This document shows positions 1 to 49,162 of a stretch of DNA of 64,000 bases, in pieces (the stretch's first letter is position 1; each line of letters starts with the position of its first letter). The position numbers and the translations under genes are program-made. The notes beneath the pieces were generated by a model, which had not been told where the DNA came from, did no database searches, and saw nothing but the letters and a program-made list of their open reading frames with translations. Source of the stretch: Cyanophora paradoxa CCMP329 (lineage: Eukaryota > Plantae > Glaucophyta); contig QPMI01000200.1 of NCBI GenBank assembly GCA_004431415.1, positions 128,308-192,307 of the forward strand, written 5' to 3'.

Positions 1-3000
1 CGCCACCCTGCCCGGAGAGCCGCGCTCGCCGCGTCTCCCACCTGGCCGGAGGGAGCTGTGCCACCACCCGCTGTCTCGCTGAACCCGCCAGGCAAGTTAA
101 GCGGGGGAGAGAGGGGGAGGGAGGGAGAGCCGTGGGCGAGGGGAGGGCATACTCCGAGGCGCTTCGGCGCGGCGGCGGCAGGGCTCTTGCGGCCGCGGGG
201 TGCACAGGCAGCCGCGAGGGCGGCGCGGGGCGCTTGTCGTTGTGCGGCGCGGCGGGGGCGGCGGGGCGCTCGAAGATCCTCTCCCGCGGCAGCGGGACGC
301 CTCGAAAATTCAAAATCCTCGAGAGCTGCGAGGGCGTCAGCAGCAGGCAGGCCGGGCTGTGCCGGGCAGGGCGCTCGGCACGGCGCACCGTCTCTGCGGG
401 GCGGGGCGAAAGCGACGGGGCGGGGCGGGGCGACGGCGACGGGGCCGGGCGAAGCGACAGCGCCGGGGCGGGCCGGGGAGCCGGCGGGGCTGCACGGGCT
501 GCACGGGGCGTGCGCCCCGGGCCGCCGCCCGCCGATCCTACGCCCGCCGTGCAATCCATGCTGCCGCCCTCCGCTCCCTCCGACCATCGCCCCGGGACTC
601 GATCATCCTGCGCGACAGGAGCGCCTTGTCAGCGACGCGTACGCACACAGACCGCTCAACTCACCTCGTCTAGGCCTGAGCCTCACCAAGCTGTGGAAGA
701 GGGTCCAGAATTCGGAGCCTGGAGACGGCGCGCGCGATCCAGCGCCTGGAACGCAAGCAAGAATCGTGAGACATGCGTTCGCGCGCCGCTGACGCAAAGC
801 TATGGTCCGGTGGCCCACCCCCGGCGATGGCGACGCGCTCGGCAGGGCGCGCTCGCCGCCAGCGGCGTGCCGGCACTCCATCGCCCGCTACGAAGGAGAG
901 ATCAACAGCGAGAAGCGTGCGGCAGTTCGCCTGTCCCCCGTTCCCGGCCAGGCGGCCGCCGCACCTTGGCTCGGCTTGGGCGCAGGGCCAACCAACTGGG
1001 CCGACGGGGCTCACCGCCGGCGATCCCTGCGAAATCGAGTGAGCTGTACGTCACGCGTGGAACGCGGAGGGCACGGCATAGACGCACGTCGTCGGTTTGT
1101 GGGAGGAAGGCAGGCCGTGAACGCAGCGCCGCACGGAAACACGGCCACGCCAGGGCATAGACATGCAGCTGCGAGAACACGGGCCACATGCGCCTAGCTA
1201 TAGCTAACGAAAGGGCCGCGCGCCGCATCTGCGAGCTTCCGCCAACGTGCTCGGCACCGCGGCCGAGCGAGCTGCGAAGGAGCATGGGACCGCTCAGGCT
1301 TCCTCGGAAAGCTGAGCCGAAGGGCGTCCTCAAGCATCCTCGATCGATATCGCTGTTGGTGTCGCTGCCGCTTTCGCCCAACAGCTGTGTACCCCGAATT
1401 CCGCGGCCTTGCACTTTGAAGAGCACGCAGGGCAAGAACTGGCTGCGGCCTCCAGCACGGGACGCAATGCAATCTCGGTGCGTCGGCGCTGGGCTCTCCA
1501 CCGCAGCGCATCCTGGTCTCCCTTACTCCACAATTTCAAACAGGTCAAACGGAGTCCGCACAGCTGCCGCGAACTTGACGAGCCTCGAGCGCGAACGACG
1601 TTCGAAGGTGCCTACTTGCATCCTCTCGCGTCCCCCGCCTGTCGCCGGCCTGATTTCAAACGCAGAGCGATGCCCCAGGGCGGCGGGCGCCCGCTCGTGG
1701 CGAAGAGCGCTCGTGTACGCGTCGTTCTTGCCTCTTCAAGCGCCCTTGATCTGCATTCTTAGCCCGGCCGCCGCCGCCAAGTGTTCCTTCTTTTGGTCGG
1801 CTCGCGCAGAAAGGAGAAGGCGGCTGCCGATGCGAAGCAAGGTGCTTTTTCGTTTCATCTCCTTTGCCCCAATCCCTCATTCCGCTGGCGGTCCAGGGAA
1901 CGGGGTGACTGGCCCGCGCGAGCAGAGCACCACCATCCAGTTCGCCTAGCGTCTTCTCCCGCAGGCCAGGTGCTCGCTCTTGTTTCCGCTACTCTCGCGT
2001 TGATGTTTTTGTGACGCCGGCCGCGTGCGCAGCGGAGCGGGTGCCGTTCTCGGACGCGTGGCTTCTGGACGGCCGCGGCCTCGGAGTTCTTGTGCTTGCG
2101 GCCGCTGGGGCGCAGGTGCGGCAGGTGCGGTCGTTTGCCGGCGCGCATTCTTCTCTTCTTTCGGTTGACGCTCCGAGCTCAGCGAGCGCTGCGCCGTCGC
2201 GGCGACCGCGTTCCGGGCGCTCTCAATCTCGGTGTGGGCGCTCGGCGACAGGTGCGGTCTGTTTATTGGCGCGCGTTCTCTCTTCTTTTGATTGAGATTC
2301 CTCTCCGTGCGCAGCGAGCGCTCTGCCTTCGACGTCGGGCACGGGCAAGGGATGCTGGAAGCGGGGACGGGCCTCCTGCTCTCTCCTTGCTGCGGTGCGC
2401 AGACGTCCCCTTGCTTCCCACTTCTCTCTTTATGCTAGGAGCCCGCTTATCCTGATGCGCGCAGCGCAGCGAGCGCGGCGACGTTCCGCAGCGAGTGCGG
2501 CGAGGGCGCATTCTGCCTGGGCCGGAGGCGGGCTGCTGGCGATCGGCTGGGCATGCGCAGGCGGCGGACGATGCCGCAGGCAGGACAGCAGTACTACCTG
2601 CTGTTCGGCAGCTGATTGCAGTTAAAACGTTAGTTTTCCTTTTCTCGGCAACTAGCGCGGGGGACGACGCCGCTTGCAGGTCATTGCGTATTGTGTAAAG
2701 CCCTTACAGCCTAAGTTGCAGGCGGGGCAGATTGGGGCAGATGAGCTCGAGGGCGCCCGCGCACGATCGGCCACGAGGCCGCTAGCTGTTTCACAGTGTG
2801 CGCACATCTACACGAGGCGCCGCGCGGGCTCGGGATTGGCCCCCACGAGGGCGCTGAGCTGTGTGCGCATGCGCACATGTACTACGGTACGACCTAGGGG
2901 CGCCGGCGCCACGCGTACGCGTGCCCCGTCGAGCTTGACGACCGACTCTCTCTCTCGGCGAGCTCGCCGAGTCGAGCCGCGTCGAGCTCAGGCCCATAGC

Positions 3001-3280
3001 AACGAGCTCGACGACCGTCGACCGGTACCGGCCACGCTGCTGGCTATAGCTACGTATACGCCGGCGCAGTGCGTCGGACACTGCGTCCAGCTGCGTCGAG
3101 CGGCGCAGTGCGTCAAACTTCGAGTGCGTCGAGCGACGCAGTTTCGTGAAACTTGGCGCACTGCTTGAAACTGCGTGGAGATTTCGAGCAGTGCTTCATT
3201 TCCGACGCAATGCTTGAAATTCCCACGCAATGCTTGAAATTTCCGACGCAATGCGTGGGTGAGCCAAAAGTGCCGGGGTA
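1..3280 (+). mobile_element. Right portion of a second copy of the 9.4-kb foldback TIR element (left end outside the window)
   Basis: 1-3280 is near-identical to 9802-13087 (same ORF set at offset ~9806) and ends in the same TIR ...GAGCCAAAAGTGCCGGGGTA at 3280. Confidence 0.9.
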
Positions 3281-4257
3281 CCTCGCTCAGTCAAACGCAC
3301 GAGAGCTGGAGCAGCTCTTCCAGTTGGCGGCGGCGACGCTTCGCGCCCGCTTTCGTGCGGCGGGGTCCGTCCTCTACAACGCGCACGGCGGTGACGAGAT
3401 CTTCAACAAGATGACGCCGCTGGACTTGTGCTTCTCTCCGGGAACGCGGGCTTTCTACCTTCGCTTCGCTCCGCACGAGCTTCGCAGCCCCGTCCCGTGC
3501 CCGGCCCCCTACACGCCGAGCGCACGCGGGGGACGGCCGATCAAGCACACTCACTCGTACCATGTCGTCGTCATTTACCCGTGCCTGCTTCATGACGCCC
3601 AGGGCGCCATCGTGGGCACCTGCTGGGAGCTGATTTCTGGTTGCGGCATCTGCGGCGCCTTCCCGGGTACCCCGGCACTTTTGGCTCACCCACGCATTGC
3701 GTCGAAATTTGAGTCATTTTTCGACGCAGTGCTCCGAAATTTCACGCAATGCTTGAAAATGCGTCGGGGTTTCAAGCAGCGCTTGAAACCCCACGCAGTG
3801 CGACGCAGCTGCCCGAAACTTCGAAGCACCGCGACTGCGCCAAATTCCCACTGCGTCTGGCTGCGTCGAGCGATGCAGCCTCAGGGCCTGGCAGCGCTAG
3901 CAGGCGCTATAGCTAGTACTAGTAGCTCGTAACCCATGCGGATTGCGGATTCAATGATTGCAGCGCGCGCGCTCGGGATCCACTGGGGCAGATCCGAGTG
4001 CGCGGGCGGATTGCAGCGCGCGCGCGGCTGTACCAGTACCGCAGTACTAGTATATACGTACGTGCATGCTTAGTTTGCTCGCGCTTCTGGGCCGCTGGGC
4101 CGCGGCCGGGCCACAGCGGCGACAGGCCCGTGGCCAGCTATTGTGAATCTGTGGCATGCGCTGTTCATAAAAGATGATGAACTGGAAGTATACAGGCTGT
4201 CCGGGATCCGAAATCTATCACACGCACCAGCCCCTGAAGCCCGAATCCGAGCGCTAG

Positions 4258-6768
4258 CTAGTTGCCGAGAAAACGAAAACTAACTGCAATCAGCTGCCGA
4301 ACAGCGGGAAGTGCTGCTGTCCTGCCTGCAGCATCGTCCGCCGGCGGCACAGGCAGAATGCGCCCTCGCCGCACTCGCTGCGGCAAGTCACCGCGCTCGC
4401 TGCGCTCAGAATAAGCGGACTCCTAGCTTAAAGAGAGAAGTGGGAAGCAAGGGACGTCTGCGCACCGAGGAGAGGGTAGCAGTCCCGCTTCCTCCGCATC
4501 CAGCATCCCTTGCCCGTGCCCGACGTCGAAGGCAGAGCGCTCGCTGCGCACGGAGAGGAATGTCAATCTAATGAAAAGAGAATGCGCGCCGATTAACAGA
4601 CCGCACCTGCGGCCGAGCGCCCACACCATGGACTGGAAGAGCGCCTCCTCTGGCCAAAAGGGCGGAGGCGTTGATGGCGCTCGCCGCGCTGCGGCATCAC
4701 GGTCAGCGCGCGGATCGAACGAAGATAAGCGAGTGGTGACCGGCAAACGGACCGCTGTGCACCACAGCAGGGTGAGTGAGCAGCAGGCCGGCTCGCGCCG
4801 CGTCCGGGCCGGTCCGGCATCCCTCGACCGCGATGCCGAAGCTGCGTTCGGAGCGTCAACCGAAAGAAGAGAAGAATGCGCGCCGGCAAACGACCGCACC
4901 TGCCGCACCTGCGCCCCAGCGGCCGCAAGCACAAGAACTCCGAGGCCGCGGCCGTCCAGAAGCCACGCGTCCGAGAACGGCACCCGCTCCGCTGCGCACG
5001 CGGCCGGCGTCACAAAAACATCAACGCGAGAGTAGCGGAAACAAGAGCGAGCACCTGGCCTGCGGGAGAAGACGCTAGGCGAACTGGATGGTGGTGCTCT
5101 GCTCGCGCGGGCCAGTCACCCCGTTCCCTGGACCGCCAGCGGAATGAGGGATTGGGGCAAAGGAGATGAAACGAAAAAGCACCTTGCTTCGCATCGGCAG
5201 CCGCCTTCTCCTTTTTGCGCGAGCCGACCAAAAGAAGGAACACTTGGCGGCGGCGGCCGGGCTAAGAATGCAGATCAAGGGCGCTTGAAGAGGCAAGAAC
5301 GACGCGTACACGAGCGCTCTTCGCCACGAGCGGGCGCCCGCCGCCCTGGGCAGCGCTCTGCTTTTGAAATCAGGCCGGCGACAGGCGGGGGACGCGAGAG
5401 GATGCAAGTAGGCACCTTCGAACGTCGTTCGCGCTCGAGGCTCGTCAAGTTCGCGGCAGCTGTGCGGACTCCGTTTGACCTGTTTGAAATTGTGGAGTAA
5501 GGGAGACCAGGATGCGCTGCGGTGGAGAGCCCAGCGCCGACGCACCGAGATTGCATTGCGTCCCGTGCTGGAGGCCGCAGCCAGTTCTTGCCCTGCGTGC
5601 TCTTCAAAGTGCAAGGCCGGAATTCGGGGTACACAGCTGTTGGGCGAAAGCGGCAGCGACACCAACAGCGATATCGATCGAGGATGCTTGAGGTTGCCCT
5701 TCGGCTCAGCTTTCCGAGGAAGCCTGAGCGGTCCCATGCTCCTTCGCAGCTCGCTCGGCCGCGGTGCCGAGCACGTTGGCGGAAGCTCGCAGATGCGGCG
5801 CGCGGCCCTTTCGTTAGCTATAGCTAGGCGCATGTGGCCCGTGTTCTCGCAGCTGCATGTCTATGCCCTGGCGTGGCCGTGTTTCCGTGCGGCGCCGCGT
5901 TCACGGCCTGCCTTCCTCCCACAAACCGACGACGTGCGTCTATGCCGTGCCCTCCGCGTTCCACGCGTGACGTACAGCTCACTCGATTTCGCAGGGATCG
6001 CCGGCGGTGAGCCCCGTCGGCCCAGTTGGTTGGCCCTGCGCCCAAGCCGAGCCAAGGTGCGGCGGCCGCCTGGCCGGGAACGGGGGACAGGCGAACTGCC
6101 GCACGCTTCTCGCTGTTGATCTCTCCTTCGTAGCGGGCGATGGAGTGCCGGCACGCCGCTGGCGGCGAGCGCGCCCTGCCGAGCGCGTCGCCATCGCCGG
6201 GGGTGGGCCACCGGACCATAGCTTTGCGTCAGCGGCGCGCGAACGCATGTCTCACGATTCTTGCTTGCGTTCCAGGCGCTGGATCGCGCGCGCCGTCTCC
6301 AGGCTCCGAATTCTGGACCCCTCTTCCACAGCTTGGTGAGGCTCAGGCCTAGACGAGGTGAGTTGAGCGGTCTGTGTGCGTACGCGTCGCTGACAAGGCG
6401 CTCCTGTCGCGCAGGATGATCGAGTCCCGGGGCGATGGTCGGAGGGAGCGGAGGGCGGCAGCATGGATTGCACGGCGGGGCGTAGGATCGGCGGGCGGCG
6501 GCCCGGGGCGCACGCCTCGCGCGCCGCCGGCTGCCCGCCCGCCCCGGCCCGCCCGGCGCCGTCGCTTCGCCCGCCCCGGCGCCTTCGCCCCGCTCCGCCC
6601 CGTCGCTTTCGCCCCGCCCCGCAGAGTCGGTGCGCCGTGCTGAGCGCCCTGCCCGGCACAGCCCGGCCTGCCTGCTGCTGACGCCCTCGCAGCTCTCGAG
6701 GATTTTGAATTTTCGGGGCGTCCCGCTGCCGCGGGAGAGGATCTTCGAGCGCCCCGCCGCCCCCGCCG
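4258..6768 (-). repeat. Left internal inverted arm of the foldback element
   Basis: Reverse complement of ~10054-12461; mirror ORFs, e.g. 5075..5833(-) vs 10994..11755(+). The arms differ mainly at ~4580-4850. Confidence 0.9.
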
Positions 6769-6779
6769 TCCTCAGGGAC

Positions 6780-7195
6780 AGCGCCGGGGGTCGCGGAAGC
6801 TCAGCAGGCGGCGGCGCGGCTCACCTGGCGGGGCGGAGGCGCGGCGGGCGGCGGCACGGCTCGCCGGGAGGGCGGCGGCGCGGCGGGCGGCGCGCAGCTC
6901 GCCGGGCGGGGCGAGGGTGCGGCGGGCGGCGGCGAAGCTCGGCGGGCGGGGCGCGGGAGCGGCGGGCGGCGGCGCGGCTCGCCAGGCGGGGCGGAGGCGC
7001 GGCGGGCGGCGCCGCGGCTCGCGGGGCGGGGCGGAGGCGCAGCGTGCTGCGGCCCGGCTCGCCGCACGGGTGGAGGCGCGGCTGGCGGCGGCGCGGCTCG
7101 CCAGGGGGGCGGAGGCGCAGCAGGCGGACAGGACGGCAGGCGCGGCGGGCGGCGGCGTGGCTCGCGGGGCGCCGCGGTGGCGCGACGCGGCTTCG
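6780..7195. repeat. G-rich degenerate minisatellite (GGCGGCGCGGCTCGC / GGCGGAGGCGCGG motifs)
   Basis: Recurring ~35-40-bp GC motifs; its inverted C-rich counterpart lies at ~9230-9835. Confidence 0.75.
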
Positions 7196-7245
7196 ATTCG
7201 TGATCACTGATCATGAGCGTGATGATCTCTTGTCATTCAATTTAA

Positions 7246-9180
7246 ACAGATCCGAGGCTGCGCTGCCCTGCAACTTGGCACAAATGAAGTGTTGGCAATT
7301 GGGGCCCACTATTGCTTGGCGAGGCACCAGCACCTTTTCAGCGCTTGCCACTATTAAAATCAAATCTAGCGCCTTTGATATAGTCCAGGTACGCTTCTCC
7401 AGTCAGTGAAAAGGCCGGGATCTTTTCCTGGCTTCATGATCAATTCTCATGATCATCATGAACACTGCATGCATGGGTGCTCAGATCCTCACTGCGAGCC
7501 AAATTGAAACTCGGGGCCCATATTGCATACGCCCGCGAGCATGCTGTTGGGGGTTCTCGAGGGCGCTGGATTTGATTATGAAGTCGGTTGAAGACAGATC
7601 CGAGGCTGCGCTGCCCTGCAACTTGGCACAAATGAAGTGTTGGCAATTGGGGCCCACTATTGCTTGGCGAGGCACCAGCACCTTTTCAGCGCTTGCCACT
7701 ATTAAAATCAAATCTAGCGCCTTTGATATAGTCCAGGTACGCTTCTCCAGTCAGTGAAAAGGCCGGGATCTTTTCCTGGCTTCATGATCAATTCTCATGA
7801 TCATCATGAACACTGCATGCATGGGTGCTCAGATCCTCACTGCGAGCCAAATTGAAACTCGGGGCCCATATTGCATACGCCCGCGAGCATGCTGTTGGGG
7901 GTTCTCGAGGGCGCTGGATTTGATTATGAAGTTGGTTTAAGACAGATCCGAGGCTGCGCTGCCCTGCAACTTGGCACAAATGAAGTGTTGGCAATTGGGG
8001 CCCACTATTGCTTGGCGAGGCACCAGCACCTTTTCAGCGCTTGCCACTATCAAAATCAAATCTAGCGCCTTTGATATAGTCCAGGTACGCTTCTCCAGTC
8101 AGTGAAAAGGCCGGGATCTTTTCCTGGCTTCATGATCAATTCTCATGATCATCATGAACACTGCATGCATGGGTGCTCAGATCCTCACTGCGAGCCAAAT
8201 TGAAACTCGGGGCCCATATTGCATACGCCCGCGAGCCGCTGAGCATGCTGTTGGGGGTTCTCGAGGGCGCTGGATTTGATTATGAAGTCGGTTGAAGACA
8301 GATCCGAGGCTGCGCTGCCCTGCAACTTGGCACAAATGAAGTGTTGGCAATTGGGCCCACTATTGCTTGGCGAGGCACCAGCACCTTTTCAGCGCTTGCC
8401 ACTATTAAAATCAAATCTAGCGCCTTTGATATAGTCCAGGTACGCTTCTCCAGTCAGTGAAAAGGCCGGGATCTTTTCCTGGCTTCATGATCAATTCTCA
8501 TGATCATCATGAACACTGCATGCATGGGTGCTCAGATCCTCACTGCGAGCCAAATTGAAACTCGGGGCCCATATTGCATACGCCCGCGAGCATGCTGTTG
8601 GGGGTTCTCGAGGGCGCTGGATTTGATTATGAAGTTGGTTTAAGACAGATCCGAGGCTGCGCTGCCCTGCAACTTGGCACAAATGAAGTGTTGGCAATTG
8701 GGGCCCACTATTGCTTGGCGAGGCACCAGCACCTTTTCAGCGCTTGCCACTATTAAAATCAAATCTAGCGCCTTTGATATAGTCCAGGTACGCTTCTCCA
8801 GTCAGTGAAAAGGCCGGGATCTTTTCCTGGCTTCATGATCAATTCTCAGAGTCTCATGATCATCATGAACACTGCATGCATGGGTGCTCAGATCCTCACT
8901 GCGAGCCAAATTGAAACTCGGGGCCCACATTGCATACGCCCGCGAGCATGCTGTTGGGGGTTCTCGAGGGCGCTGGATTTGATTATGAAGTTGGTTTAAG
9001 ACAGATCCGAGGCTGCGCTGCCCTGCAACTTGGCACAAATGAAGTGTTGGCAATTGGGGCCCACTATTGCTTGGCGAGGTACAAGCACCTTTTCAGCGCT
9101 TGCCACTATCAAAATCAATTCTAGCGTTTTTGATATAGCCTAGATACGCTTCTCCAGTCAGTGAAAAGGCCGGGATCTTT
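7246..9180 (+). repeat. Tandem array of ~348-bp units (about 5.5 copies)
   Basis: Unit start ACAGATCCGAGGCTGCGCTGCCCTGCAAC recurs at ~7246, 7594, 7942, 8298, 8645 and 9001. Units are near-identical, with no unique spacers. Confidence 0.95.
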
Positions 9181-9229
9181 GCTGGGCCTCATGATCATGA
9201 TCAGTGATCATGATCATCATGAGCACTAC

Positions 9230-9835
9230 ACCGCCTGGCGACCCGCGCCACCGCCCGCCGCGCCTCCGCTCCGCCCGCGAGCCGCGCCGCCACCCTGAGC
9301 CCCGCCCCGTCCGACGAGCCGCGTCGCCGCCCGACGCGTTTCCGCCCCGCCCCGCGAGCCGCGGCGCCGCTCGCCGCGCCCCCGCCCCGCCCGGCGACCC
9401 GCGCCGCCGCCCGCAGCGCCTCCGACCTGCCCGGCGGGCCGCGCCTCCGCCCGCCGCGCCTCCGCCCCGCCCCGCGAGCCGCGGCGCCGCCCGCCGCGCC
9501 TCCGCCCCGCCCGCGAGCCGCGCCTCCGCCCGCCACGCCTCCGCCCTGCCCGGCGAGCCGCGCCTCCGCTCGCCGCGCCTCCGCCCCGCCCCGCGAGCCG
9601 CGGCGCCGCCCGCCGCGCCCCCGCCCCGCCCCGCGAGCTGCGCCGCCACCCGCTGAGCCCCCGCCCTGCCCGGAAAGCCGAGTCGCTGCCCGACGCGCCT
9701 CCGCCCGTCCGGCGAGCCGCGTCGCCGCCCGCCGAGCCTCCGTCCCGCCCCGCGAGCTGCGCCGCCGCCCCCGCGCCCCCGCCCCGCCCAGTGAGCCGCG
9801 CCGCCACCCTGCCCGGAGAGCCGCGCTCGCCGCGT
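9230..9835. repeat. C-rich degenerate minisatellite, inverse of 6780-7195
   Basis: Repeated GCGAGCCGCG / CCGCGCCTCCGCCC motifs. Confidence 0.75.
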
Positions 9836-10053
9836 CTCCCACCTGGCCGGAGGGAGCTGTGCCACCACCCGCTGTCTCGCTGAACCCGCCAGGCAAGTTA
9901 AGCGGGGGGAGAGAGGGGGGAGGGAGGGAGAGCCGTGGGCGAGGGGAGGCATACTCCGAGGGCGCTTCGGCGCGGCGGCGGCAGGGCTCTTGCGGCCGCG
10001 GGGTGCACAGGCAGCCGCGAGGGCGGGCGCGGGGCGCTTGTCGTTGTGCGGCG

Positions 10054-12461
10054 CGGCGGGGGCGGCGGGGCGCTCGAAGATCCTCTCCCGCGGCAGCGGG
10101 ACGCCTCGAAAATTCAAAATCCTCGAGAGCTGCGAGGGCGTCAGCAGCAGGCAGGCCGGGCTGTGCCGGGCAGGGCGCTCGGCACGGCGCACCGTCTCTG
10201 CGGGCGGGGCGAAAGCGACGGGGCGGGGCGGGGCGACGGCGACGGGGCCGGGCGAAGCGACAGCGCCGGGGCGGGCCGGGGAGCCGGCGGGGCTGCACGG
10301 GGCTGCACGGGGCGTGCGCCCCGGGCCGCCGCCCGCCGATCCTACGCCCCGCCGTGCAATCCATGCTGCCGCCCTCCGCTCCCTCCGACCATCGCCCCGG
10401 GACTCGATCATCCTGCGCGACAGGAGCGCCTTGTCAGCGACGCGTACGCACACAGACCGCTCAACTCACCTCGTCTAGGCCTGAGCCTCACCAAGCTGTG
10501 GAAGAGGGGTCCAGAATTCGGAGCCTGGAGACGGCGCGCGCGATCCAGCGCCTGGAACGCAAGCAAGAATCGTGAGACATGCGTTCGCGCGCCGCTGACG
10601 CAAAGCTATGGTCCGGTGGCCCACCCCCGGCGATGGCGACGCGCTCGGCAGGGCGCGCTCGCCGCCAGCGGCGTGCCGGCACTCCATCGCCCGCTACGAA
10701 GGAGAGATCAACAGCGAGAAGCGTGCGGCAGTTCGCCTGTCCCCCGTTCCCGGCCAGGCGGCCGCCGCACCTTGGCTCGGCTTGGGCGCAGGGCCAACCA
10801 ACTGGGCCGACGGGGCTCACCGCCGGCGATCCCTGCGAAATCGAGTGAGCTGTACGTCACGCGTGGAACGCGGAGGGCACGGCATAGACGCACGTCGTCG
10901 GTTTGTGGGAGGAAGGCAGGCCGTGAACGCAGCGCCGCACGGAAACACGGCCACGCCAGGGCATAGACATGCAGCTGCGAGAACACGGGCCACATGCGCC
11001 TAGCTATAGCTAACGAAAGGGCCGCGCGCCGCATCTGCGAGCTTCCGCCAACGTGCTCGGCACCGCGGCCGAGCGAGCTGCGAAGGAGCATGGGACCGCT
11101 CAGGCTTCCTCGGAAAGCTGAGCCGAAGGGCGTCCTCAAGCATCCTCGATCGATATCGCTGTTGGTGTCGCTGCCGCTTTCGCCCAACAGCTGTGTACCC
11201 CGAATTCCGCGGCCTTGCACTTTGAAGAGCACGCAGGGCAAGAACTGGCTGCGGCCTCCAGCACGGGACGCAATGCAATCTCGGTGCGTCGGCGCTGGGC
11301 TCTCCACCGCAGCGCATCCTGGTCTCCCTTACTCCACAATTTCAAACAGGTCAAACGGAGTCCGCACAGCTGCCGCGAACTTGACGAGCCTCGAGCGCGA
11401 ACGACGTTCGAAGGTGCCTACTTGCATCCTCTCGCGTCCCCCGCCTGTCGCCGGCCTGATTTCAAACGCAGAGCGATGCCCCAGGGCGGCGGGCGCCCGC
11501 TCGTGGCGAAGAGCGCTCGTGTACGCGTCGTTCTTGCCTCTTCAAGCGCCCTTGATCTGCATTCTTAGCCCGGCCGCCGCCGCCAAGTGTTCCTTCTTTT
11601 GGTCGGCTCGCGCAGAAAGGAGAAGGCGGCTGCCGATGCGAAGCAAGGTGCTTTTTCGTTTCATCTCCTTTGCCCCAATCCCTCATTCCGCTGGCGGTCC
11701 AGGGAACGGGGTGACTGGCCCGCGCGAGCAGAGCACCACCATCCAGTTCGCCTAGCGTCTTCTCCCGCAGGCCAGGTGCTCGCTCTTGTTTCCGCTACTC
11801 TCGCGTTGATGTTTTTGTGACGCCGGCCGCGTGCGCAGCGGAGCGGGTGCCGTTCTCGGACGCGTGGCTTCTGGACGGCCGCGGCCTCGGAGTTCTTGTG
11901 CTTGCGGCCGCTGGGGCGCAGGTGCGGCAGGTGCGGTCGTTTGCCGGCGCGCATTCTTCTCTTCTTTCGGTTGACGCTCCGAGCTCAGCGAGCGCTGCGC
12001 CGTCGCGGCGACCGCGTTCCGGGCGCTCTCAATCTCGGTGTGGGCGCTCGGCGACAGGTGCGGTCTGTTTATTGGCGCGCGTTCTCTCTTCTTTTGATTG
12101 AGATTCCTCTCCGTGCGCAGCGAGCGCTCTGCCTTCGACGTCGGGCACGGGCAAGGGATGCTGGAAGCGGGGACGGGCCTCCTGCTCTCTCCTTGCTGCG
12201 GTGCGCAGACGTCCCCTTGCTTCCCACTTCTCTCTTTATGCTAGGAGCCCGCTTATCCTGATGCGCGCAGCGCAGCGAGCGCGGCGACGTTCCGCAGCGA
12301 GTGCGGCGAGGGCGCATTCTGCCTGGGCCGGAGGCGGGCTGCTGGCGATCGGCTGGGCATGCGCAGGCGGCGGACGATGCCGCAGGCAGGACAGCAGTAC
12401 TACCTGCTGTTCGGCAGCTGATTGCAGTTAAAACGTTAGTTTTCCTTTTCTCGGCAACTAG
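10054..12461 (+). repeat. Right internal inverted arm of the foldback element
   Basis: Inverted copy of 4258-6768 and direct copy of ~250-2655. Confidence 0.9.
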
Positions 12462-15400
12462 CGCGGGGGACGACGCCGCTTGCAGGTCATTGCGTATTGT
12501 GTAAAGCCCTTACAGCCTAAGTTGCAGGCGGGGCAGATTGGGGCAGATGAGCTCGAGGGCGCCCGCGCACGATCGGCCACGAGGCCGCTAGCTGTTTCAC
12601 AGTGTGCGCACATCTACACGAGGGCGCCGCGCGGGCTCGGGATTGGCCCCCACGAGGGCGCTGAGCTGTGTGCGCATGCGCACATGTACTACGGTACGAC
12701 CTAGGGGCGCCGGCGCCACGCGTACGCGTGCCCCGTCGAGCTTGACGACCGACTCTCTCTCTCGGCGAGCTCGCCGAGTCGAGCCGCGTCGAGCTCAGGC
12801 CCATAGCAACGAGCTCGACGACCGTCGACCGGTACCGGCCACGCTGCTGGCTATAGCTACGTATACGCCGGCGCAGTGCGTCGGACACTGCGTCCAGCTG
12901 CGTCGAGCGGCGCAGTGCGTCAAACTTCGAGTGCGTCGAGCGACGCAGTTTCGTGAAACTTGGCGCACTGCTTGAAACTGCGTGGAGATTTCGAGCAGTG
13001 CTTCATTTCCGACGCAATGCTTGAAATTCCCACGCAATGCTTGAAATTTCCGACGCAATGCGTGGGTGAGCCAAAAGTGCCGGGGTACCCGGGCACCTTC
13101 TCCTCCCTGATGACCAGCGGCAGAGGAGTCGACACTGACACGGGCGCGACGTACACGGCTCGCCTCCCGCTCCAGACGACGGTGTCACGGACAGAACCGC
13201 CCTTCTGCCGCCAGGTTCCTCCGGCCATGTGCGACCTGCTTCATCGCATCTACTGCAACCTCGCCGTCTACGCCCCCCAGCTCGCTGGTCTACGCGAGGC
13301 GGTCTTCCCTTCTCTTGCCGACGAGTACATCAACATCCCCCTCGCCGACACGTCCACGTTCGTGGTCACGGACCCGCCGCGCCCGACGAGCTGGACCAAG
13401 TCCGTCAGGCCGGGCGACGAGTACGGGCTCCTTCGCTCTGCCAGGCTGGATGCTGGGTCGCCCGCGGCCTACTCTCACATTCAGCCGGCGTACGGAACGG
13501 ACATCTCGGCTGTACCGTGGACTCAGGTGGGGCAATGCGACGTCACGGGACCGTTCACTCGAACGGATCCGGTACAGCCTCCGAACCTCGACAATCTCCA
13601 GTGGACCTGGAATCCTCAGTCCCTCCCCGCACTGGGCACGGGCTACATGGAGGACTACCCTCCCCACGTCCTCCTTCGCGTGCTTCTGCTGATGGCGCCG
13701 GCACACCGCGAACGAGTGTGCACGGCCTTCAAACTGTCGGAGCTGGAGGTGGAGCGGGCGATCATTCAGTTCGCCAACGATGATCCTCTCCCGTTCTTCG
13801 ACGACATCGTGCCGCATGCGAACGAGCGCATCATGACGCTCATGCAGCTCACCGCCCTCCGCACGGCGGACGAGGAGACGGACCAGCGGCGGAGGAACGA
13901 GGAGTACCGCCGGCGCGCCCAGGACCGCGACGAGGAGTCGCCAAGTGACCACGACGAGCCAGCTGGAATTCGAACGCCGGCGGGCTTGGCTGCTGTCTTG
14001 TTAACCCGCCCTGCAAACGACGGCTTGGACGATGCCATCCCGGCTGCAGGCGGCTCGTGGCGCCCACCATCCGCGCGCCCGCGCGGGACGATGCCTTCGG
14101 ACCAGCTGCCCACCGCACCCTCGGCCGCGCCGCCGACGGTACAGGTTGCAGTCGCAACTCCGACGCCCGCGACGCATCCCCCCACGCCCTCGGCCACGCA
14201 GCCGATGGCGCCGGCTATGACTCCAGCCCCGTCGGTGACAACGTCCGCTGTCGCACCCTCGGCCGCGATGCCGACGGCGCCGACAGTCACGACGCCGACC
14301 GCGGGACCCTCGACCACGACGCCGACGGCCCCGGAGGAGGCTGAGGACACGGACACGTCGTTCAGCAAGGAGCTCTGCGCGCGGCTTCACATTGCACCTG
14401 ATCATGACGAGCACGGCAGACTTCACCCGCCTCCCGACGTTCGCGAGATTCCCGCCCACACATTCTCCCTTGCCCCAGGCTGCGCGATCTACTGGCCAGG
14501 CGAGCAATCGTACATGCTCATGACGACGGCGCTGGACAACGCAGACCTGTACTCGGACGAGCGCCCCGTCGCGTGGTGCCCCGCCTCTTATGACGCGGTG
14601 GGCATCGCAAACACGGGCGTGTTTCAGAACAACCTTGCACGTCGGATCGGCAGGCGCCCGCTGAACGACGATGACATGGCCCGTTTCAAGGACGAGAAGC
14701 GCCCGATCCCGCTCACGTACAAGGTCACTCGCGAGGCGCAGGCTGCACAGTTGCTGCATCACATTCCCCGCTTCCGCTCAGCAGTCTACCTTGTCGCCTG
14801 TCTGGCCTACGACAGCACCCCGGCGGAGCTCGTGACTGTACGTGACCTGACTTCGTCGGTTCCCTTCCTCGAGTTCCTCGGCCTCAGCGCAACCGACGCG
14901 AGCATCGCAAGCTACACGACAGACTCGGTGGCTACCGCGATCCTTTCCTCAGTGATCGACACGGCCCGGGCCTACAAGACGGCGCTGGACGCTCGCAAAG
15001 GCGAGGGGGCCACGACCTCACCGCTGCACCACCACTCCACGCTGCGCGCAGTCACGGCGCAAGGCGACACGCATGCTGTACGCATTCGACTGTTCCACCA
15101 GTCTCTTCGAGAATTGCACAGGCTCCCTCCCGCGCTGGAGGCAGAAGAAGGGCAAGTTCTCATCGATTACGTCGACTCGAAGCTACGGCACACGGCTGCG
15201 CTGATACCTCGCGTCTCCGTCTATCTCCGGGCCAGGGCACTCGCTCAGGGCACGCTGCTGGCAAGCGTCGTCAGTGCCACAGATGACGCCTCTCTCCGCA
15301 CGACCTTCTGCGAACCGCAACCGCTTCTGGTCGAGAACGATGCAATCCCGCGGACCTACATCTTCAGTGTGATCATTGAACAGTCTGAGTACATGCTTCG

Positions 15401-18250
15401 GGCACTGAACCTCACGACGGATACGGCGCGGCTCACTCCGGACCTGATGTCCTGGACAACACATTTTGGCCGTCTAGTTCTTGACAGCCACCGAGGCGGC
15501 CGCCTCACGTCCTGCTTCCTACGTGACCTCGCGAAGGAATTTGAGCTCACGTACTCATCCATCGCCATCTCCATTCCGAACCCCGGTCATCGCTTTTACG
15601 TCCCGACGAACGCCGACGCGGCACTGAAGGCATGCGAGGCGGGCTTGGAGCAGCATCGCAAGGGGTCCTCGCCGACGGGCACTGCCTTCGTCACGGAACT
15701 TAGCCCGACCGTCGCTATGGCACGCATGAACAGCATCCGTGACCAGACTGCGTACACGCACGCCATCATCAACTACGTACGCGACGCGTTTCCCAGTGAG
15801 GGGTTCGGCCAGGCCCAACCGCCTACGATGAAGCTCAAGCGCCTCCCGGCTACCGACCCGATTCCACTCAGCTACGAACCTCACAGTGAAATCCTCATCA
15901 CGCGCAACGAGGCCGCACTTCTGGCAGCTTCGCAGCCTCGGGCTCGCGTGCTCGCTGTTGCGCTCCGCGTTGCGCTGGCGACGCGGTACCAGGAGGCGTC
16001 GACGCCGGAGGGCCACCTCGTCGCCGAACGGATGGCTACGGCGATGGCGAACCGCATCCTCGCAATCCCTGGCCTCGAGCATCCGCTCACGCTTCTCTCC
16101 GTTCTTCGCGCGTACCTGCGAGACGCCCATGTGCACCTCGGTGTCTACCTCTGTTGGGACCGCGATTCCCCGGACACTCCGATCCGCCACCTCCTGCCGC
16201 GACTCCCGAACGAGTACATGCCCATCTCGACGGCGATCGCAGAGCTCCTTCCGGGTACCGATTACCGTGGGAGAGTCGGACCGCACAAACTCCCGCAATA
16301 CTTGCGCACGGGACTCAGCTGGGAGGACATCGTGGCGCGCTCTCTGGGCACGGATCCGTACTTCACGGCGGAGGAGGAGCTTCGCGTGACGCAGCGGCCT
16401 CTCTTGGTGGGCACCAGCAAACGATTGCGCGAATCCGGCAAGAAGGACGAGCAGCTGTCGCAAACTCAGCGGCGGCGCCTCACGGAGAACAAGCGGAATG
16501 AGATCACGAGCCGGGCCCTCCAGCATCTCTTGCAGTTCAATACGGGTATCGCCTTCCACCCTCCCAAGGCTGTCGACGCCATGTTCGCGGAACGGTTGGC
16601 GTACTTCTGGGACGTGCAGGACGACGAGATCGAGGACGGACACGGCGAGAACGACCTCGCACGAGCACTTCGACGACGCCTCACGGCTATTTGGCCGGAC
16701 ACTCTCGGGCTCACCACGACACCGTTATCTCGTCCCGACCCTGAATTCTACCCGAATCCCGTAGCAGACGGATACTACGAGATCGCGGGAAGGGGGGGCA
16801 AGCGCTTCCACGATCACGCCCTTGTCCCCAAGGAACGTGATTTTCTCCCGGATTACGGGTCTCTCGAACCCCCACTTCCCCCTGAGCTTTACGGTACGGA
16901 GGCGGGCGACGCGATCCTGGAGGACGCGACGCGTGACGACCTTGTCTCGTACTCCCAGCCACCGATGCCGTTCCTTCAGCAGCGACGGATGCTGGCCAGC
17001 TTATACTCGCTTTCCGAGGAGTATCAACTTCGGGGGCCGTGGTTGACGGGAGCTATCTCGGAAATCTTCACGCGTCCTGAGCGCCCCGTGGAGAGGACCA
17101 ACAACCCAGATCCACAGGAGGGCGACCTTCCCCTGGATCGCACTCAGGGCGGTCTCCATGCGATTCGACTCATGCATGGTGACGCCGACATCGACAACTT
17201 CTTCCGCAAGTTTTATCCGCTGCGACCTCTTTACGGTCTCTTCTACGCGGGGACGAAGAATCTCATTCGGGCGTGCGATCGGGCCATCCGCTTCCGTAGC
17301 GATCCGGAACTCAACGCGTACGGCGCGGGCCTTCGTACAGACGGACCCCGCCTGCGCAACCGTGGAACGACATGGTTCAAGCAGTTTTCCATTACGACCT
17401 CCAACGAGGCTTCTCCGTCCAACCCCTACAGGTCGTATCTCACGGCTGCAACGAACCCGACCTTGCAGCCTAGCTTTGTTCCGGAGCTGCGTCTCTCGGA
17501 AGAGGCGGGTGACCCGACCACTCCGCTCTTCCCCGACCCCGTCAACACTCCGACTCAGACCCCTCCCTTCCGCACCTTCTTTCACGTACCTGCGGACTTC
17601 AGCGGCAACGCCAACGGGCCTCTTCTTGCAGCCCTCGACCCCACGCCGAACCGAGGGGTGCGCAAGCTCACCATGGCCATGTACGATCCAAACCACACGG
17701 ACACGTGGACACTACTCACGAATGGCATTATTCGTCCGTCTCGCGAAGACGCGCGGACCATCGATTACGTACGGCTGGGGATCAGTGCAAGCAACATGCT
17801 TCTTCCGGGCGGCATCATTCACGAGACTCACGAACGCCTCGCGGGTACGGATTGGCAACATGTCGTCATTGCCTTCCCGCTCGACGTCCACCTCTACATC
17901 GCGGGCATTGCCTTCTTCGTTGCACAGTGGGGAATTCTTTCCAGCTCCTTCCCCACGCACGTCGTCGATCTCCACCCGGCGTTGCACCGCATGCTGTCAG
18001 ATTACGTGCACCGGATGCGGGAAACATTGGGTTTTACTGTCAATGAAACCGGCATCGCCAGCTTGACAGATTACTGGACGAGCGAGTCCAGCACGTGGTC
18101 GCCGGCATACCGTATTCCGGCGGGCTCTCTACAATCGGCGTTGTCGGCACTTCTCCTCAAGTACATCATCGCTCACAACGCGCGCCTCATAGTCCCTCGT
18201 GACGTGCATCGGAGGGTGAACCGCAACGGCCCCAACTACGACACCCTGCG

Positions 18251-19783
18251 TATCCTCCCGCATAATTTCAAAGCTTGGAGGGCGACGGCGCGGCGCCCCG
18301 TCCCCTCGCCGCACCGTCGCACCTTCGGCCGCTGAGCGCACGCGTCGCCAGCAGAGGCCGCGGCGCCAGAAGAGGCCGCGGCGCCAGAGTCCGCCCGCGG
18401 CCCGCCCCCAGCGACCGAAGCCAGCGGCTGCGGGAAGTGCCGCCCAGCGCCAGCTCGGTCTGCGCTTGAGTTGCCTGCATAAATGTGAGCCAAGGACGCG
18501 CCGCAGACCCATGAGCTGCATGGGCGGCGCACCTCACCCGGCGGGGGTTGGAGGGGATCAGCGCAAAGGTGGAGACGAACGCTATAGAGCACGACATGCC
18601 ATCGCTTTCGCCCGCTGTCATCCGCCACGCCATCGCCCCGCCTGGTAAGCCACGCGCTGGGCATGCGCACGCCCCACACCCACCACCGCCGCCGAATCGG
18701 AGGCGGCGTGCGGAAGATCCAGCGACCGGGGCTGCAATTGCACAACGTGAGCACTGCAAACGCGTACCGCCGGCCCCGAAGCGCGGCTCGGCCGGCTCGA
18801 CCGGACCGATCGGTCCGAACGCGGCGGCGGAAGCGCTGAAGCTGCGATTGCTTCGTCTACATGTGCATCAGCGTGACCAGGTCGATGCTCCACAGGTCCG
18901 AAAGCGCTGCGCGGGAAGGGGACAGCCGGTCAGCTGCAGGGTTCGGAGCGGATCAGCCCAGAAGCGGCCACGGACGCTCTGGAGCTGCACACGCATCGCT
19001 CGCATCACGCTCACGAACTGCGGGAGTCAAAACTGTGCCTCGGGGGCGCGAGCGCAGCGGTCAACGAGCCGCGCATCCCGTCGACTCGCCGTGGAGCCTC
19101 CCGACCCGTTCCTGTGCGCCGCGTGAGCCAGGAGACGGAGCAGGAGCCCTCCTAGCACGGGAAAGACGCACCGCGCGACCCCCGGGCCTTCACAGCGGGG
19201 AGCTGCCGAGCGAGGGAGTACCGCGCTCCGCGGGGACGGAATCGGGCGCGACTCGGCGAGCTCGACGCCAAACGAGCTGCTAACGATGCGGCTGCACGCT
19301 GCTAGCGTCCGCAGATGCCGCGAGCTGCGGATCTGGCCCCCGTGGCTAGCGAGCCAGTACTGCTAGAGTTGGCAAGCGTTGGCAGGCGCCCCGGCGGCCG
19401 CTTGCGAGCGCGAAGGGAGCTAGAACGCCGCCAGGCCGTAGGCGCGTTCGGCGGAGAACCGTAGAACGTTCTACGTATACGCGTTCTACGACGGATCTAA
19501 GCTTCCACGCTCTACGTTCAAAACCATTCTAAAAGTTCAAAACAAACAAAAACCATAGAACGTTCTATAGAACGGTTCTACGTTCTAAGAAAGGTTTTGA
19601 AATTATGCGGGAGGATAGTTCGGCGGAGAACCGTAGAACGTTCTACGCGTTCTACGACGGATCTAAGCTTCCACGCTCTACGTTCAAAACCATTCTAAAA
19701 GTTCAAAACAAACAAAAACCATAGAACGTTCTATAGAACGGTTCTACGTTCTAAGAAAGGTTTTGAAATTATGCGGGAGGATA
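18251..19783. mobile_element. 1.5-kb non-autonomous TIR transposon (TAT..ATA termini, 5-bp TSD)
   Basis: 22-bp TIR TATCCTCCCGCATAATTTCAAA. TSD CTGCG at 18246-18250 and 19784-19788. Removal restores ...YDTLR|QQLNEF... The right ~170 bp is tandemly duplicated (~19446-19617, 19618-19783). Confidence 0.9.
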
Positions 19784-22263
19784 CTGCGCCAGCAGCTGAA
19801 CGAGTTCAAATCGGCACGCCTGCAGCGCTGGTGGCCGAACGCGTTCACTCTCACGGACGAGCTGCGGGAGCTATTCAAATCCGAGACGGTCACTGCGGAG
19901 CAGGCTGAGAACCTCACGCCAACAGCAGGCTTCGTTGAAGTGGACCGCAACATTATCACGGCCCAAATCCGCGACTTCATCGACGTGATGCGCCCTCATG
20001 TCGAGAACGCCATGGCGGACGAACTTGACCCGGACACGCGTACGGACGCCTGGGACCCATTCCTCATTCGCCTCGGCGCAGTCCTCTACGAGCCGGACCT
20101 GCGACTGGAGCTGTCGAACTGGATCACACGGGTCTTTAATTGGCCGAGCTCTCCCTCGATGGAGAACTACGACTACAGCAACTCGCTGTACTACACTTAC
20201 GAGGCGATTCCCCCGCTCCGCTACTCAGACTCCCGACCCGATGATGAGGACTATCGGCGACACTTCCCGCACGTGTACTACGAGTGCTCGCCCGGTCCTG
20301 GTCGCTGGACTTCTCCATTCGATGGTCTAGCCGACGGCCACAAGGTCTTCAATCCGCTCAAGTTCGCCCTCCGCCACAACCCCGCCACTCCTTGAGTGTA
20401 TGCCATCGATATCTACGAGGCGCCGTACGCGGACCGGCTCCCATCCGAGCAGCGGACGGCCGATCTCCCGGCGACGCCGACGCGGTGGTCCATGTCCCCG
20501 AGCCTCGGGCCCGCGGACGTTGACGGCGCCCCTGCTTCGCCGCCTCTTCATCCGCGTGGCTATCGCATCCTGCGAACCCGTCGCCGCACTCTGAAGCCTG
20601 TGCGCTCGTGGGTGGAAGGCTGGAACGCTACGCGGCGCCTCTACTACGCCCACTCGATCGCCGACGCTCTGCGACAGCACACGAGCTCCACGCCCCCGGA
20701 CTCGACTTCGGTGGGGTTGACGGCGACGGGTGCGGCAGCGGTCGACCCCACTGCAACAGTGACGGTCAAGATGGCAACCGTACCGGCAGCCGTCGCGCCT
20801 GACGACGAGATGTCCAACGCCGACGCAATCTGGGGTTCGGATGACGAGATGCCGACGGCGCCCACGTCTGCGACAGAGGACCCGCCTCCGCCTGACGACA
20901 CTGGCGTGCCTTCCGACCGCCCCACCTCGCCTTTCCCGTGGTACTGCGGTCCTCTCCCGATCCCGCGCAACGGGCTTCTTTTCGTCGAGACCGCCGACTT
21001 CGCGTACTCTCCCTACTCGGCCCAGGGCACGCCGTACTGCTGGATCGAGTTCGCCCTGACGTCACCGGCTCACCAGACGATCATCGTGCCACGAGTGTCG
21101 CTGTTCGACGACGTGTCCTTCGCTCAGTCCTTCCACATGTACGACTGGAGCCGCCTTTCGCCCTCGCACTGCGTCAACGCTCAGTACCTGGCCCGTCTCG
21201 CTGACGAACTGCGCGACACTCCGGTCGTTCTCAACACCAGCGCGGGCTTGGCTTTGGAGCTGGCACGCTCGCAAGTCATCCTCACGCGCCTGGCGTTTGT
21301 CATGAACACGCTCGGCCGCCCGGCGTACGACGCTCTCCTGTACTCGTCGCTCGATTGCGTTCACGCTCAGCGTTCGCGTTACTACGTCGACATCATCCTA
21401 CGCGGTGACCGTGGGCTGACCCAGGCCTGGCCGATCCTCATTCAGTACCTGCGGAAAACGGCCCCGTTCTTCCGTTCGAGCTTGGCGTACGAGACTCTGG
21501 GACCGTACATGGACCCTCGAGAGATCACGGTGGCCCAGCTGACGTTGGACCCTGGACTCGAGACGGATGAGGGTGCGGGTGGTGTCACTTTTGGGACCCT
21601 CACGACGGCGCACATCACCTCCTGCAGCAAGCGGAATGGTGCGAGGGGTATTCGCGGCGACCTCTACACCCAGGGCCTGGGCTACACGGACACCGGCACC
21701 GACTCTGCACGACCGTCGCCCGCGACAAGCCCGTTCTTCTGGGTGGCAGCTGGACGCCTTCCGCGGACGCACCCACCGAGGCTCGCCCTCGCTGGCGCGC
21801 GCGTCAAGCGTCCCTTCACGCCGGAGTGGCTCCTCAAGCCCGCTCCCTCTTTGGTGAAGGCGATGTGCCGCAAGAAGGTGAACACGGCGAATCTCCAAGC
21901 ACCTGACTTATAATTACACCCGATGGCAACCGTCTTCAAGGCCACGTCCACGGTCGATCCCCCTCACTTCGCCGCCCTGCAACTCGCGACGCACTCTCTC
22001 CTGGCGCGACCAGGCGAGCAGTTCGACCCGCACGAGGCGGACTTGTTTCCTTCTTCACCCTCAGGCCTTGCGGTTCGACTGGTCGATCCGAAGAAGGCTC
22101 TTGACAAGCGCCTCGCCGACGCAAGAATCTGCGTTCGTCTTCAAGTTGGCGCGCTCATCCCCGGCCAACGCGTAAAGTCGATGCGTACGGTTCTCGCACT
22201 GGTCGACACGGGTGCGGCAGCGGATGTCATGGACGGCAGCATCGCGGACACGTAAGGTCCCTA

Positions 22264-22555
22264 TGTTTTTCAAATCGATTTTTTTCGCGCGGGACCGTCC
22301 CGCGCGGGACGCGGTACCGTCCCGAATTTTGGAAATTTCCGGGACGCGGTACCGTCCCGAATTTTGGAAATTTCCGAGCTGCCGGCACCCGCCTAGCCGG
22401 GATGCGGCTAGCTCGGACGCAGGACTTCTAGACTGCTTTCAAAGTTCTAGACGCTGGACTGTCCCGTGCGGTGCGGCAGGCGTCCCGCGCGGGACTACCC
22501 CGCCCCGCGTCCCGCGCGGGACGGTCCCGCGCGAAAAAAATCGATTTGAAAAACA
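22264..22555. mobile_element. ~0.3-kb MITE with 51-bp TIRs (hAT-like ends) inside the protease
   Basis: TGTTTTTCAAATCGATTTTTTTCGCGCGGGACCGTCCCGCGCGGGACGCGG at 22264-22314, inverted at 22505-22555. Imperfect 8-bp duplication CGCGGACA/CGAGGACA at 22243-22250 and 22559-22566. Exact ends ambiguous. Confidence 0.85.
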
Positions 22556-25500: not shown

Positions 25501-25878
25501 CGATCCAGAGGAGCAGGTGACAGAAGACGCCGAGGACGTGACTTCGGAAGTGGATCCCGCGGAGTTCTCCGACGCTGACGACGACGAACTCTCGTCTGAG
25601 GAACAGCGGAGCTCGCCCTCGCGCGCCGAGGCCGATCTCCCTGGACGGACGGGACTTCACTCTGAGGAACAGCGGAGCTCGCCCGCGCACGGCAACACCA
25701 CGCGCGACGGGACTCGCGACTCAGGAGATCGAGGGAGGGGGAGGGGTACACTGCGCGGGCGACCTCGTGGACGACCACGTGGACGACCTCGCCTGCACCA
25801 CCCCAGAAACCGCCCTTCGGCAACCGAGCCTCGCAAGCCGGTGCTGCCTGACGCGGATCCGATCGGGAACCTTCTCCC

Positions 25879-48303: not shown

Positions 48304-48327
48304 CCGCCCCCCGGCAGCGGCAGCCGC

Positions 48328-48965: not shown

Positions 48966-49162
48966 ATCACGACTCAGTGACCAAGAACAGGGGCAGGGAC
49001 TCCGCCAGGGAGCCTCGGAGAGCCAGGGCTAGGCCTAGGCCTAGGGCAAACCCGATCGCGATCGCACGCGTGAATCGGGAGCTCCGAAACCGTCGGGCTC
49101 GAGGCTCTGTCTCAGACCTAAGAGGTACATGCATTTGTTTGGCCGGGGTGAGGGTCGGGGGG

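What the first reader, a model, noticed from the sequence alone, without database searches (positions are those of the whole stretch)
3668..13087. 9.4-kb non-coding foldback transposon that carries its own satellite array
Seen: a nested symmetric layout of 37-bp TIR, subterminal repeats, 2.5-kb arm, GC minisatellite, 348-bp tandem array, inverted minisatellite, inverted arm and TIR, with a 6-bp TSD and no credible ORF. A near-identical second copy ends 387 bp upstream, so the whole unit was recently mobile. Known: TAY..RTA ends with 6-bp TSDs are the IS3EU signature, and some hAT groups also give 5-6-bp TSDs. Inference: a satellite-dispersing, hairpin-RNA-producing element, probably of an undescribed family.
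Basis: partly seen in the sequence, partly recalled or inferred. Interest (0 to 1): 0.85.

Follow-up and report, generated by a model that had tools for sequence, protein, structure and literature searches.

The report
Gene-less foldback transposon in a glaucophyte
This is a real, recently mobile 9.4-kb piece of gene-less jumping DNA with mirror-image arms and a short internal tandem array, inserted twice into a retrotransposon of the alga Cyanophora paradoxa; such foldback elements are known in flies and plants, but I found no description of one with this type of end.

Summary
The structure is real. Element 3668-13087 (9,420 bp) has perfect 37-bp TIRs (TAC..GTA), motif-rich subterminal zones, inverted internal arms, an inverted 40-bp GC minisatellite and a central 348-bp array of 5.6 units. 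No coding signal was found. The host is the glaucophyte Cyanophora paradoxa; the contig was not identified. The element and a second copy sit in one ORF of a large Ty3/Gypsy retrotransposon, and paralogous retrotransposon proteins show both empty sites, so these are true insertions. The two copies differ by no substitutions over 3.3 kb. Gene models on two other contigs carry left- and right-arm alleles, so a palindromic assembly artefact is unlikely. Corrections: the 6-bp TSD is a palindrome, so 6 bp is favoured, not proven. The arms are layered (0.4% divergence inside, 7% further out, about 400 bp unalignable), which fits arm-to-arm conversion as proposed for Galileo. The array looks like an in-place amplification of the central spacer; satellite dispersal and hairpin RNA are untested. 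Best reading: a non-autonomous foldback-type DNA transposon, most likely moved by an IS3EU/GingerRoot-type transposase (about 55%). It is a new variant of a known kind.

The parts
3662..3667 (.). Left target-site copy CCCGGG (palindromic)
   Evidence: empty site in paralogs
3668..3704 (+). Left 37-bp terminal inverted repeat, TAC start
3705..3900 (+). Left subterminal zone rich in (C/G)ACGCA motifs in both orientations, likely extra transposase-binding sites (inferred)
   Evidence: 7 motifs vs 0.46 expected
3901..4256 (.). Left-end-specific segment, not alignable to the right end
   Evidence: local score within shuffles, p 0.2
4257..4627 (+). Old arm layer (left); 7.3% substitutions plus gaps versus 12037-12462
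4628..4840 (.). Left-only stretch, partly an old internal duplication (65% to 12057-12282)
4841..6768 (+). Young arm layer (left); 98.3% to 10054-11989, 0.37% substitutions over 4860-6500, longest perfect run 620 bp
6782..7190 (+). Left 40-bp GC minisatellite (20+20 substructure)
7191..7240 (.). TGATCA-rich left edge of the centre, inverted relative of the right edge
7241..9230 (+). 348-bp tandem array: five full units (0-3 differences apart from two 8-bp insertions, with a 1-2/3-4 dimer pattern) and a diverged partial sixth unit merging into a TGATCA-rich edge
9231..9809 (-). Right 40-bp GC minisatellite, inverted, about 80% alike to the left one
9810..10053 (.). Right-only stretch
10054..11989 (-). 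Young arm layer (right)
12037..12462 (-). Old arm layer (right)
12463..12849 (.). Right-end-specific segment
12850..13050 (-). Right subterminal zone with the same motifs and a 20-bp tandem
   Evidence: 9 motifs vs 0.73 expected
13051..13087 (-). Right 37-bp terminal inverted repeat
13088..13093 (.). Right target-site copy CCCGGG
1..3280 (.). Right 3.28 kb of a second copy in the same orientation, cut by the window edge; its own right flank starts CCTCGC
3281..3667 (+). Host retrotransposon ORF segment between the two insertions (128 codons)
   Evidence: 93-98% identical to paralog proteins; coding signal
13094..29693 (+). Rest of the host Ty3/Gypsy retrotransposon: long ORF, RT, RNase H, integrase, LTR-like end; context, not part of the element

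Best explanation
A non-autonomous cut-and-paste DNA transposon with foldback architecture in Cyanophora paradoxa. Shown: it is an insertion with perfect 37-bp TIRs, carries no gene, and has moved very recently, including two insertions 387 bp apart in one Gypsy ORF. Inferred: a transposase made elsewhere binds the TIR and the subterminal (C/G)ACGCA motifs and inserts the unit with a 6-bp stagger at GC-rich, CC..GG-like sites; IS3EU/GingerRoot is the likeliest enzyme (about 55%). Also inferred: the long arms arose when internal sequence next to one end was copied in inverted orientation next to the other, and a later conversion tract re-homogenised about 1.9 kb, leaving layers of divergence. 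The 348-bp array grew in place by unequal exchange or slippage of the central spacer. The unit is most likely a methylated passenger with no host function; hairpin RNA is possible only on read-through.
For: TIR and flanking repeat. Paralogous retrotransposon proteins read straight through both insertion sites. No substitution between copies. Gene models on tig00021358 and tig00000383 match the left half (306/323 aa in exact runs) and right half (367/387) with arm-specific alleles and cannot be spliced from the window sequence. Non-coding. Motif enrichment. Layered arm divergence. IS3EU: TA..TA ends, usually 6-bp TSD (PMC10045372), TIR over 30 bp (PMC12730594); GingerRoot TSDs are GC-rich (PMC6839031); Styx has a 36-bp TIR, 6-bp TSD and local clustering (PMC10853768). 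Galileo extends TIRs by inverted recruitment of internal sequence (PMC3573991). Repeats in this alga are CpG-methylated (PMC12344493).
Against: No transposase or autonomous partner found. Only one complete target site, and it is palindromic. A neighbouring element with TAT..ATA ends has an unambiguous 5-bp TSD, so TA ends in this genome do not imply 6 bp. Published fungal IS3EU ends are TAYGG, here TACCC. Most foldback elements are assigned to Mutator or P. Centre and far ends of the other copies were not seen.
Confidence: 0.8

Rival explanations
1. Same foldback transposon, but moved by a hAT-type enzyme (hAT5/hAT6-like), or with true ends GTA or GGTA and a 4- or 2-bp TSD from another superfamily.
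For: hAT lineages with 5- and 6-bp TSDs exist (PMC12730594). The neighbouring TA-ended element has a 5-bp TSD. GG precedes the TIR start at all three ends and at a TIR-like motif at 26228. Short subterminal motifs are typical of hAT (own knowledge).
Against: One assumption, a CC..GG-like target preference, explains all ends under the 6-bp reading. The bases after the upstream copy's GTA fit the host Cys-Leu codons of the empty site. hAT5/6 are placed in an animal lineage.
Confidence: 0.25
2. A gene-less derivative of a polinton-like virus (PLV), with its long inverted ends collapsed around a small centre and inserted by a PLV rve integrase.
For: Glaucophyte genomes hold 156 such elements, 85 with rve (PMC12220804 supplement). 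PLVs have TIRs of hundreds to thousands of bp and 5-6-bp TSDs.
Against: Only 37 bp are perfect at the ends and about 400 bp further in do not align, the reverse of terminally homogeneous PLV TIRs. Polinton ends are given as AG-type. No viral gene remnant; no TIR match in IMG/VR.
Confidence: 0.08
3. One reading: a vehicle that disperses a satellite and makes hairpin RNA that feeds RNA silencing.
For: A 1.9-kb, 98% inverted pair would make long dsRNA if read through. The alga has Dicer, Argonaute and RdRP homologs (PMC3700990). It lies inside a retrotransposon transcription unit. Tetris is a precedent for satellite seeding.
Against: No RNA data. No array seen outside the element; 5.6 units in one copy. 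The monomer resembles the host's TGATCA/CATG-rich intergenic DNA between convergent genes in composition, so it could stop read-through instead. Methylated repeats in this alga are mostly silent.
Confidence: 0.15
4. Assembly artefact: a flipped long read or a mis-joined repeat.
For: The published assembly is PacBio with majority-rule Illumina correction (PMC6704402), which could make copies look more alike. Copy differences are all homopolymer indels.
Against: The arms differ at 31 positions in 1.9 kb and far more outside it, and the differences recur in independent copies. Both insertions fall at exact empty sites of a host ORF.
Confidence: 0.03

Closest known systems
Foldback-type non-autonomous elements: Tetris (Drosophila virilis, PMC4079207)
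   Same: No ORF, long modular inverted arms, internal tandem repeats, non-coding middle, few complete copies, autonomous partner unknown.
   Different: Tetris has 8-10-bp TSDs (assigned to Mutator), AT-rich 220-bp repeats inside the arms and shown satellite arrays outside. Here the TSD is 6 bp or less, the long repeat is in the middle, the arms carry a GC minisatellite, and outside arrays are not shown.
Galileo extended-TIR copies (P superfamily, PMC3573991)
   Same: Non-autonomous copies lengthen their inverted part by recruiting internal sequence and by tandem expansion; conversion between ends is proposed.
   Different: 7-bp TSD, known THAP transposase, TIRs up to about 1.3 kb and continuous from the end; here the long arms are separated from the 37-bp TIR by end-specific segments.
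IS3EU/GingerRoot superfamily, including Styx (PMC10045372, PMC6839031, PMC10853768)
   Same: TA..TA ends, 6-bp GC-rich TSD, TIR over 30 bp (Styx 36 bp), size 4-13 kb, local clustering of new copies, gene-poor targets.
   Different: No integrase-like transposase here; ends are TACCC rather than the fungal TAYGG; I found no report of foldback arms or of this group in glaucophytes.
Polinton/Maverick and polinton-like viruses (PMC12220804)
   Same: 6-bp TSD, kilobase inverted repeats, present in glaucophytes.
   Different: No pPolB, capsid, ATPase or integrase; TA ends; arms not homogeneous from the tips.

Membership tests
TIR DNA transposon, non-autonomous | Terminal inverted repeats | tested here: met
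   37 bp perfect
TIR DNA transposon, non-autonomous | Insertion with target duplication at a site that is empty elsewhere | tested here: met
   paralog proteins continuous across both sites; flanking repeat
TIR DNA transposon, non-autonomous | Dispersed near-identical copies with different flanks | tested here: met
   two in the window; arm sequence on two other contigs, flanks unseen
TIR DNA transposon, non-autonomous | No transposase ORF | tested here: met
Foldback-type architecture | Long modular inverted arms with internal tandem repeats around a non-coding middle | tested here: met
   arms interrupted by about 400 bp of end-specific DNA
Classical Foldback/Mutator group | 8-10-bp TSD | tested here: not met
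   longest flanking direct repeat is 6 bp
IS3EU/GingerRoot | TA..TA termini | tested here: inconclusive
   met on the favoured boundary; the palindromic target allows GTA or GGTA ends
IS3EU/GingerRoot | 6-bp TSD | tested here: inconclusive
   one complete site, palindromic; 6, 4 or 2 bp all give the same empty site
IS3EU/GingerRoot | TIR longer than 30 bp | tested here: met
   37 bp; definition
IS3EU/GingerRoot | IS3/integrase-like DDE transposase in an autonomous partner with the same TIR | not testable with these tools
   no Cyanophora genome DNA reachable:
hAT (incl. hAT5/hAT6) | hAT transposase; 8-bp TSD, or 5-7 bp in sub-lineages | tested here: inconclusive
Polinton/PLV | pPolB, integrase, ATPase and capsid genes | tested here: not met
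   no coding signal or family hit
Polinton/PLV | Long TIRs homogeneous from the tips, AG-type ends | tested here: not met
Satellite DNA | Long high-copy arrays outside the element | not testable with these tools

The most novel reading that the evidence does not exclude
The first foldback-type family of the IS3EU/GingerRoot superfamily and the first in glaucophytes. It is currently mobile at 9.4 kb without a gene, inserts preferentially into young Gypsy elements, turns their read-through transcripts into 1.9-kb hairpins that feed small-RNA silencing, and seeds a 348-bp satellite.
Probability: 0.1. Interest if true: 0.65.

Novelty: new variant of a known kind. Interest (0 to 1): 0.36.

Why it matters
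Foldback structure is thought to arise independently in several transposon superfamilies. A case with IS3EU-type ends would add one, and its layered arms preserve steps of that process. It also shows very recent DNA-transposon activity in a genome reported as having little repeat expansion (PMC6704402), with 11.5% of it unclassified repeats, and gives a concrete locus on which existing Cyanophora methylome and small-RNA data can test hairpin silencing. If neither hairpin RNA nor outside arrays exist, it is a repeat-library entry of modest interest.

Tried and rejected
No DNA copies were reachable: TIR or monomer patterns gave 0 hits in JGI metagenomes, IMG/VR and GTDB genomes; four contig look-ups were blank; five element ORFs are not in the protein collection; the arm has no match in phages. 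Rfam gave only a chance hit outside the element. A hidden decayed or intron-rich gene in the arms was rejected. I first took the window for contig tig00000448 and withdrew it: that gene model differs by about 10 residues and lacks two of the window's insertions, so it is a paralog. Local duplication as the source of the two copies was rejected because flanks differ and both sites are separate empty sites. The monomer fold is weak (z -1.9). The bacterial promoter scan is uninformative for a eukaryote. No paper was found on Cyanophora DNA transposon superfamilies; Repbase could not be checked. For that reason host genes could not be used to name the contig.

Full report
Source. The window is GC-rich eukaryotic DNA with short-intron genes. 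The reverse transcriptase at 22916-25906 matches EukProt models of Cyanophora paradoxa at up to 100% identity (species named). It is not human. The contig is not established: the best-matching model is a paralog with about 10 residue differences and without two of the window's insertions. The published assembly is PacBio-based and probably haploid (PMC6704402).

Observation. The layout is as described. The TIR is perfect for 37 bp from 3668 and 13087, and CCCGGG flanks both ends. The TIR occurs at only three places in the window. The 40-bp minisatellites and the 348-bp array are found by TRF. The upstream copy (1-3280) equals 9802-13087 apart from ten single-base homopolymer indels, with no substitution, and has a different right flank. 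The element is non-coding: its best codon-scored segments equal shuffled sequence, whereas six control coding regions, five of them from host genes, stand out. None of 83 six-frame pieces has a credible family hit.

It is a true insertion. Both copies interrupt one long ORF of a large Ty3/Gypsy retrotransposon (RT, RNase H and integrase zinc domain; zinc knuckle in paralogs). Four paralogous proteins from other contigs read continuously across the site of this element, and five across the site of the upstream copy. I did not build or search a joined sequence; the empty sites are read from these natural proteins. Two further gene models, low-complexity and evidently spurious, lie over this element on other contigs. 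One matches the left half in exact runs over 306 of 323 residues and the other the right half over 367 of 387, each with its arm's own alleles and each ending at the edge of the centre. Neither can be spliced from the window sequence. So there are at least three loci, and four if the window comes from the same assembly. Because left-right differences recur between copies, a flipped-read artefact is unlikely. Majority-rule polishing could still have inflated the identity between copies.

Anatomy, refined. The arms are layered. After the TIR come about 200 bp enriched in (C/G)ACGCA motifs (7 and 9 seen, under 1 expected), then about 400 bp that do not align between ends (p 0.2), a 370-430-bp block 7.3% divergent with many gaps, a 1.9-kb block 98.3% identical (0.37% substitutions over 4860-6500), end-specific stretches, and minisatellites about 80% alike. 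The array has five nearly identical units with a dimer pattern of variants and a diverged partial sixth unit that merges into a TGATCA-rich edge; an inverted relative of that edge bounds the other side. This points to amplification in place rather than capture of a ready-made satellite (inference). The monomer occurs nowhere else in the window. Its composition resembles host intergenic DNA between convergent genes, and its CpG ratio is 0.63 against about 1.17 in the arms, a marginal difference on 14 sites.

The TSD caveat. CCCGGG is a palindrome, so ends at TA (6-bp TSD), GTA (4 bp) or GGTA (2 bp) all give the same empty site, and the upstream copy's flank also starts with CC. I favour 6 bp (about 75%). 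One assumption, a CC..GG-like target preference, explains every end; the two bases after the upstream copy's GTA fit the host Cys-Leu codons; and TA ends with 6-bp GC-rich TSDs are a described combination. A neighbouring, different element has TAT..ATA ends with a clear 5-bp TSD, so TA ends alone do not fix the superfamily.

Mechanism. Shown: insertion, recent movement, no gene. Inferred: cut-and-paste movement by a transposase made elsewhere, binding the TIR and the subterminal motifs, with local hopping or target preference giving two insertions 387 bp apart. The likeliest enzyme is IS3EU/GingerRoot (about 55%): TA..TA ends, usually 6-bp TSD (PMC10045372), TIR over 30 bp (PMC12730594); Styx has a 36-bp TIR and clusters locally (PMC10853768). 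Rivals are hAT5/6-like or short-TSD enzymes (about 25%) and a polinton-like virus integrase (about 8%; glaucophytes hold 156 such elements, 85 with rve). The arms most likely arose by inverted copying of internal sequence and later arm-to-arm conversion, as proposed for Galileo (PMC3573991). Repeats in this alga are CpG-methylated and methylated genes mostly silent (PMC12344493), so the default is a silent passenger. Hairpin RNA needs read-through across about 7 kb; the RNAi machinery exists (PMC3700990), but nothing here shows the transcript.

Comparison and novelty. It works like the foldback elements Tetris and Galileo; Tetris is already reported to seed satellite arrays (PMC4079207). It is not a member of the Mutator-type foldbacks, since an 8-10-bp TSD is excluded. 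IS3EU membership is plausible but unproven: ends and TSD are inconclusive and the transposase could not be reached. I found no paper describing this family, a foldback with IS3EU-type ends, or DNA transposon superfamilies in Cyanophora; Repbase was not available. Verdict: real and well supported as a transposon, a new variant of a known kind, interest 0.36. The satellite-dispersal and hairpin claims remain hypotheses that public data can test.

Noticed in passing
window <1-29693: Very large Ty3/Gypsy retrotransposon: paralog models of 2,270-3,081 aa with a zinc knuckle, and a 1,700-aa ORF part with no Pfam hit. This one young copy carries five DNA-transposon-type insertions, with empty sites seen in paralogs.
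   Followed up: partly
window 18251-19783: 1,533-bp non-coding element with TAT..ATA ends, 22-bp TIR, an unambiguous 5-bp TSD (CTGCG) and a tandemly duplicated right end of about 166 bp that includes the TIR.
   Followed up: partly
window 25879-26427: 549-bp element with CACTG..CAGTG ends and a 3-bp TSD, EnSpm/CACTA-like; empty site in a paralog.
   Followed up: partly
window 26228-26245: Inside that element, a motif resembling the start of the foldback TIR, also preceded by GG; no partner end in the window. The pattern was chosen after seeing it.
   Followed up: partly
window 22253-22566: 314-bp MITE-like insertion with a long inverted repeat set back about 11 bp from mismatched ends, flanked by a 5-bp direct repeat.
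   Followed up: partly
window 28866-29693: LTR-like 3' end of the retrotransposon bounded by short inverted TG..CA ends, with a 55-bp tandem inside.
   Followed up: no
window 48310-48970: Host intergenic region between convergent genes, rich in TGATCA/CATG like the array; also holds a 24/24 match to element 3873-3896.
   Followed up: partly
window 29700-64000: Dense host genes with short GC-rich introns, recognised by eye from translations only: long coiled-coil protein, Alba, NAC-alpha, a polyphenol-oxidase/YfiH-like gene, kinesin, METTL16-like, DPCD-like, a possible cyclase.
   Followed up: no
window 59400-61300: AT-richer non-coding stretch with three 147-149-bp-spaced diverged repeats and CTAG-rich DNA; possibly another repeat.
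   Followed up: no
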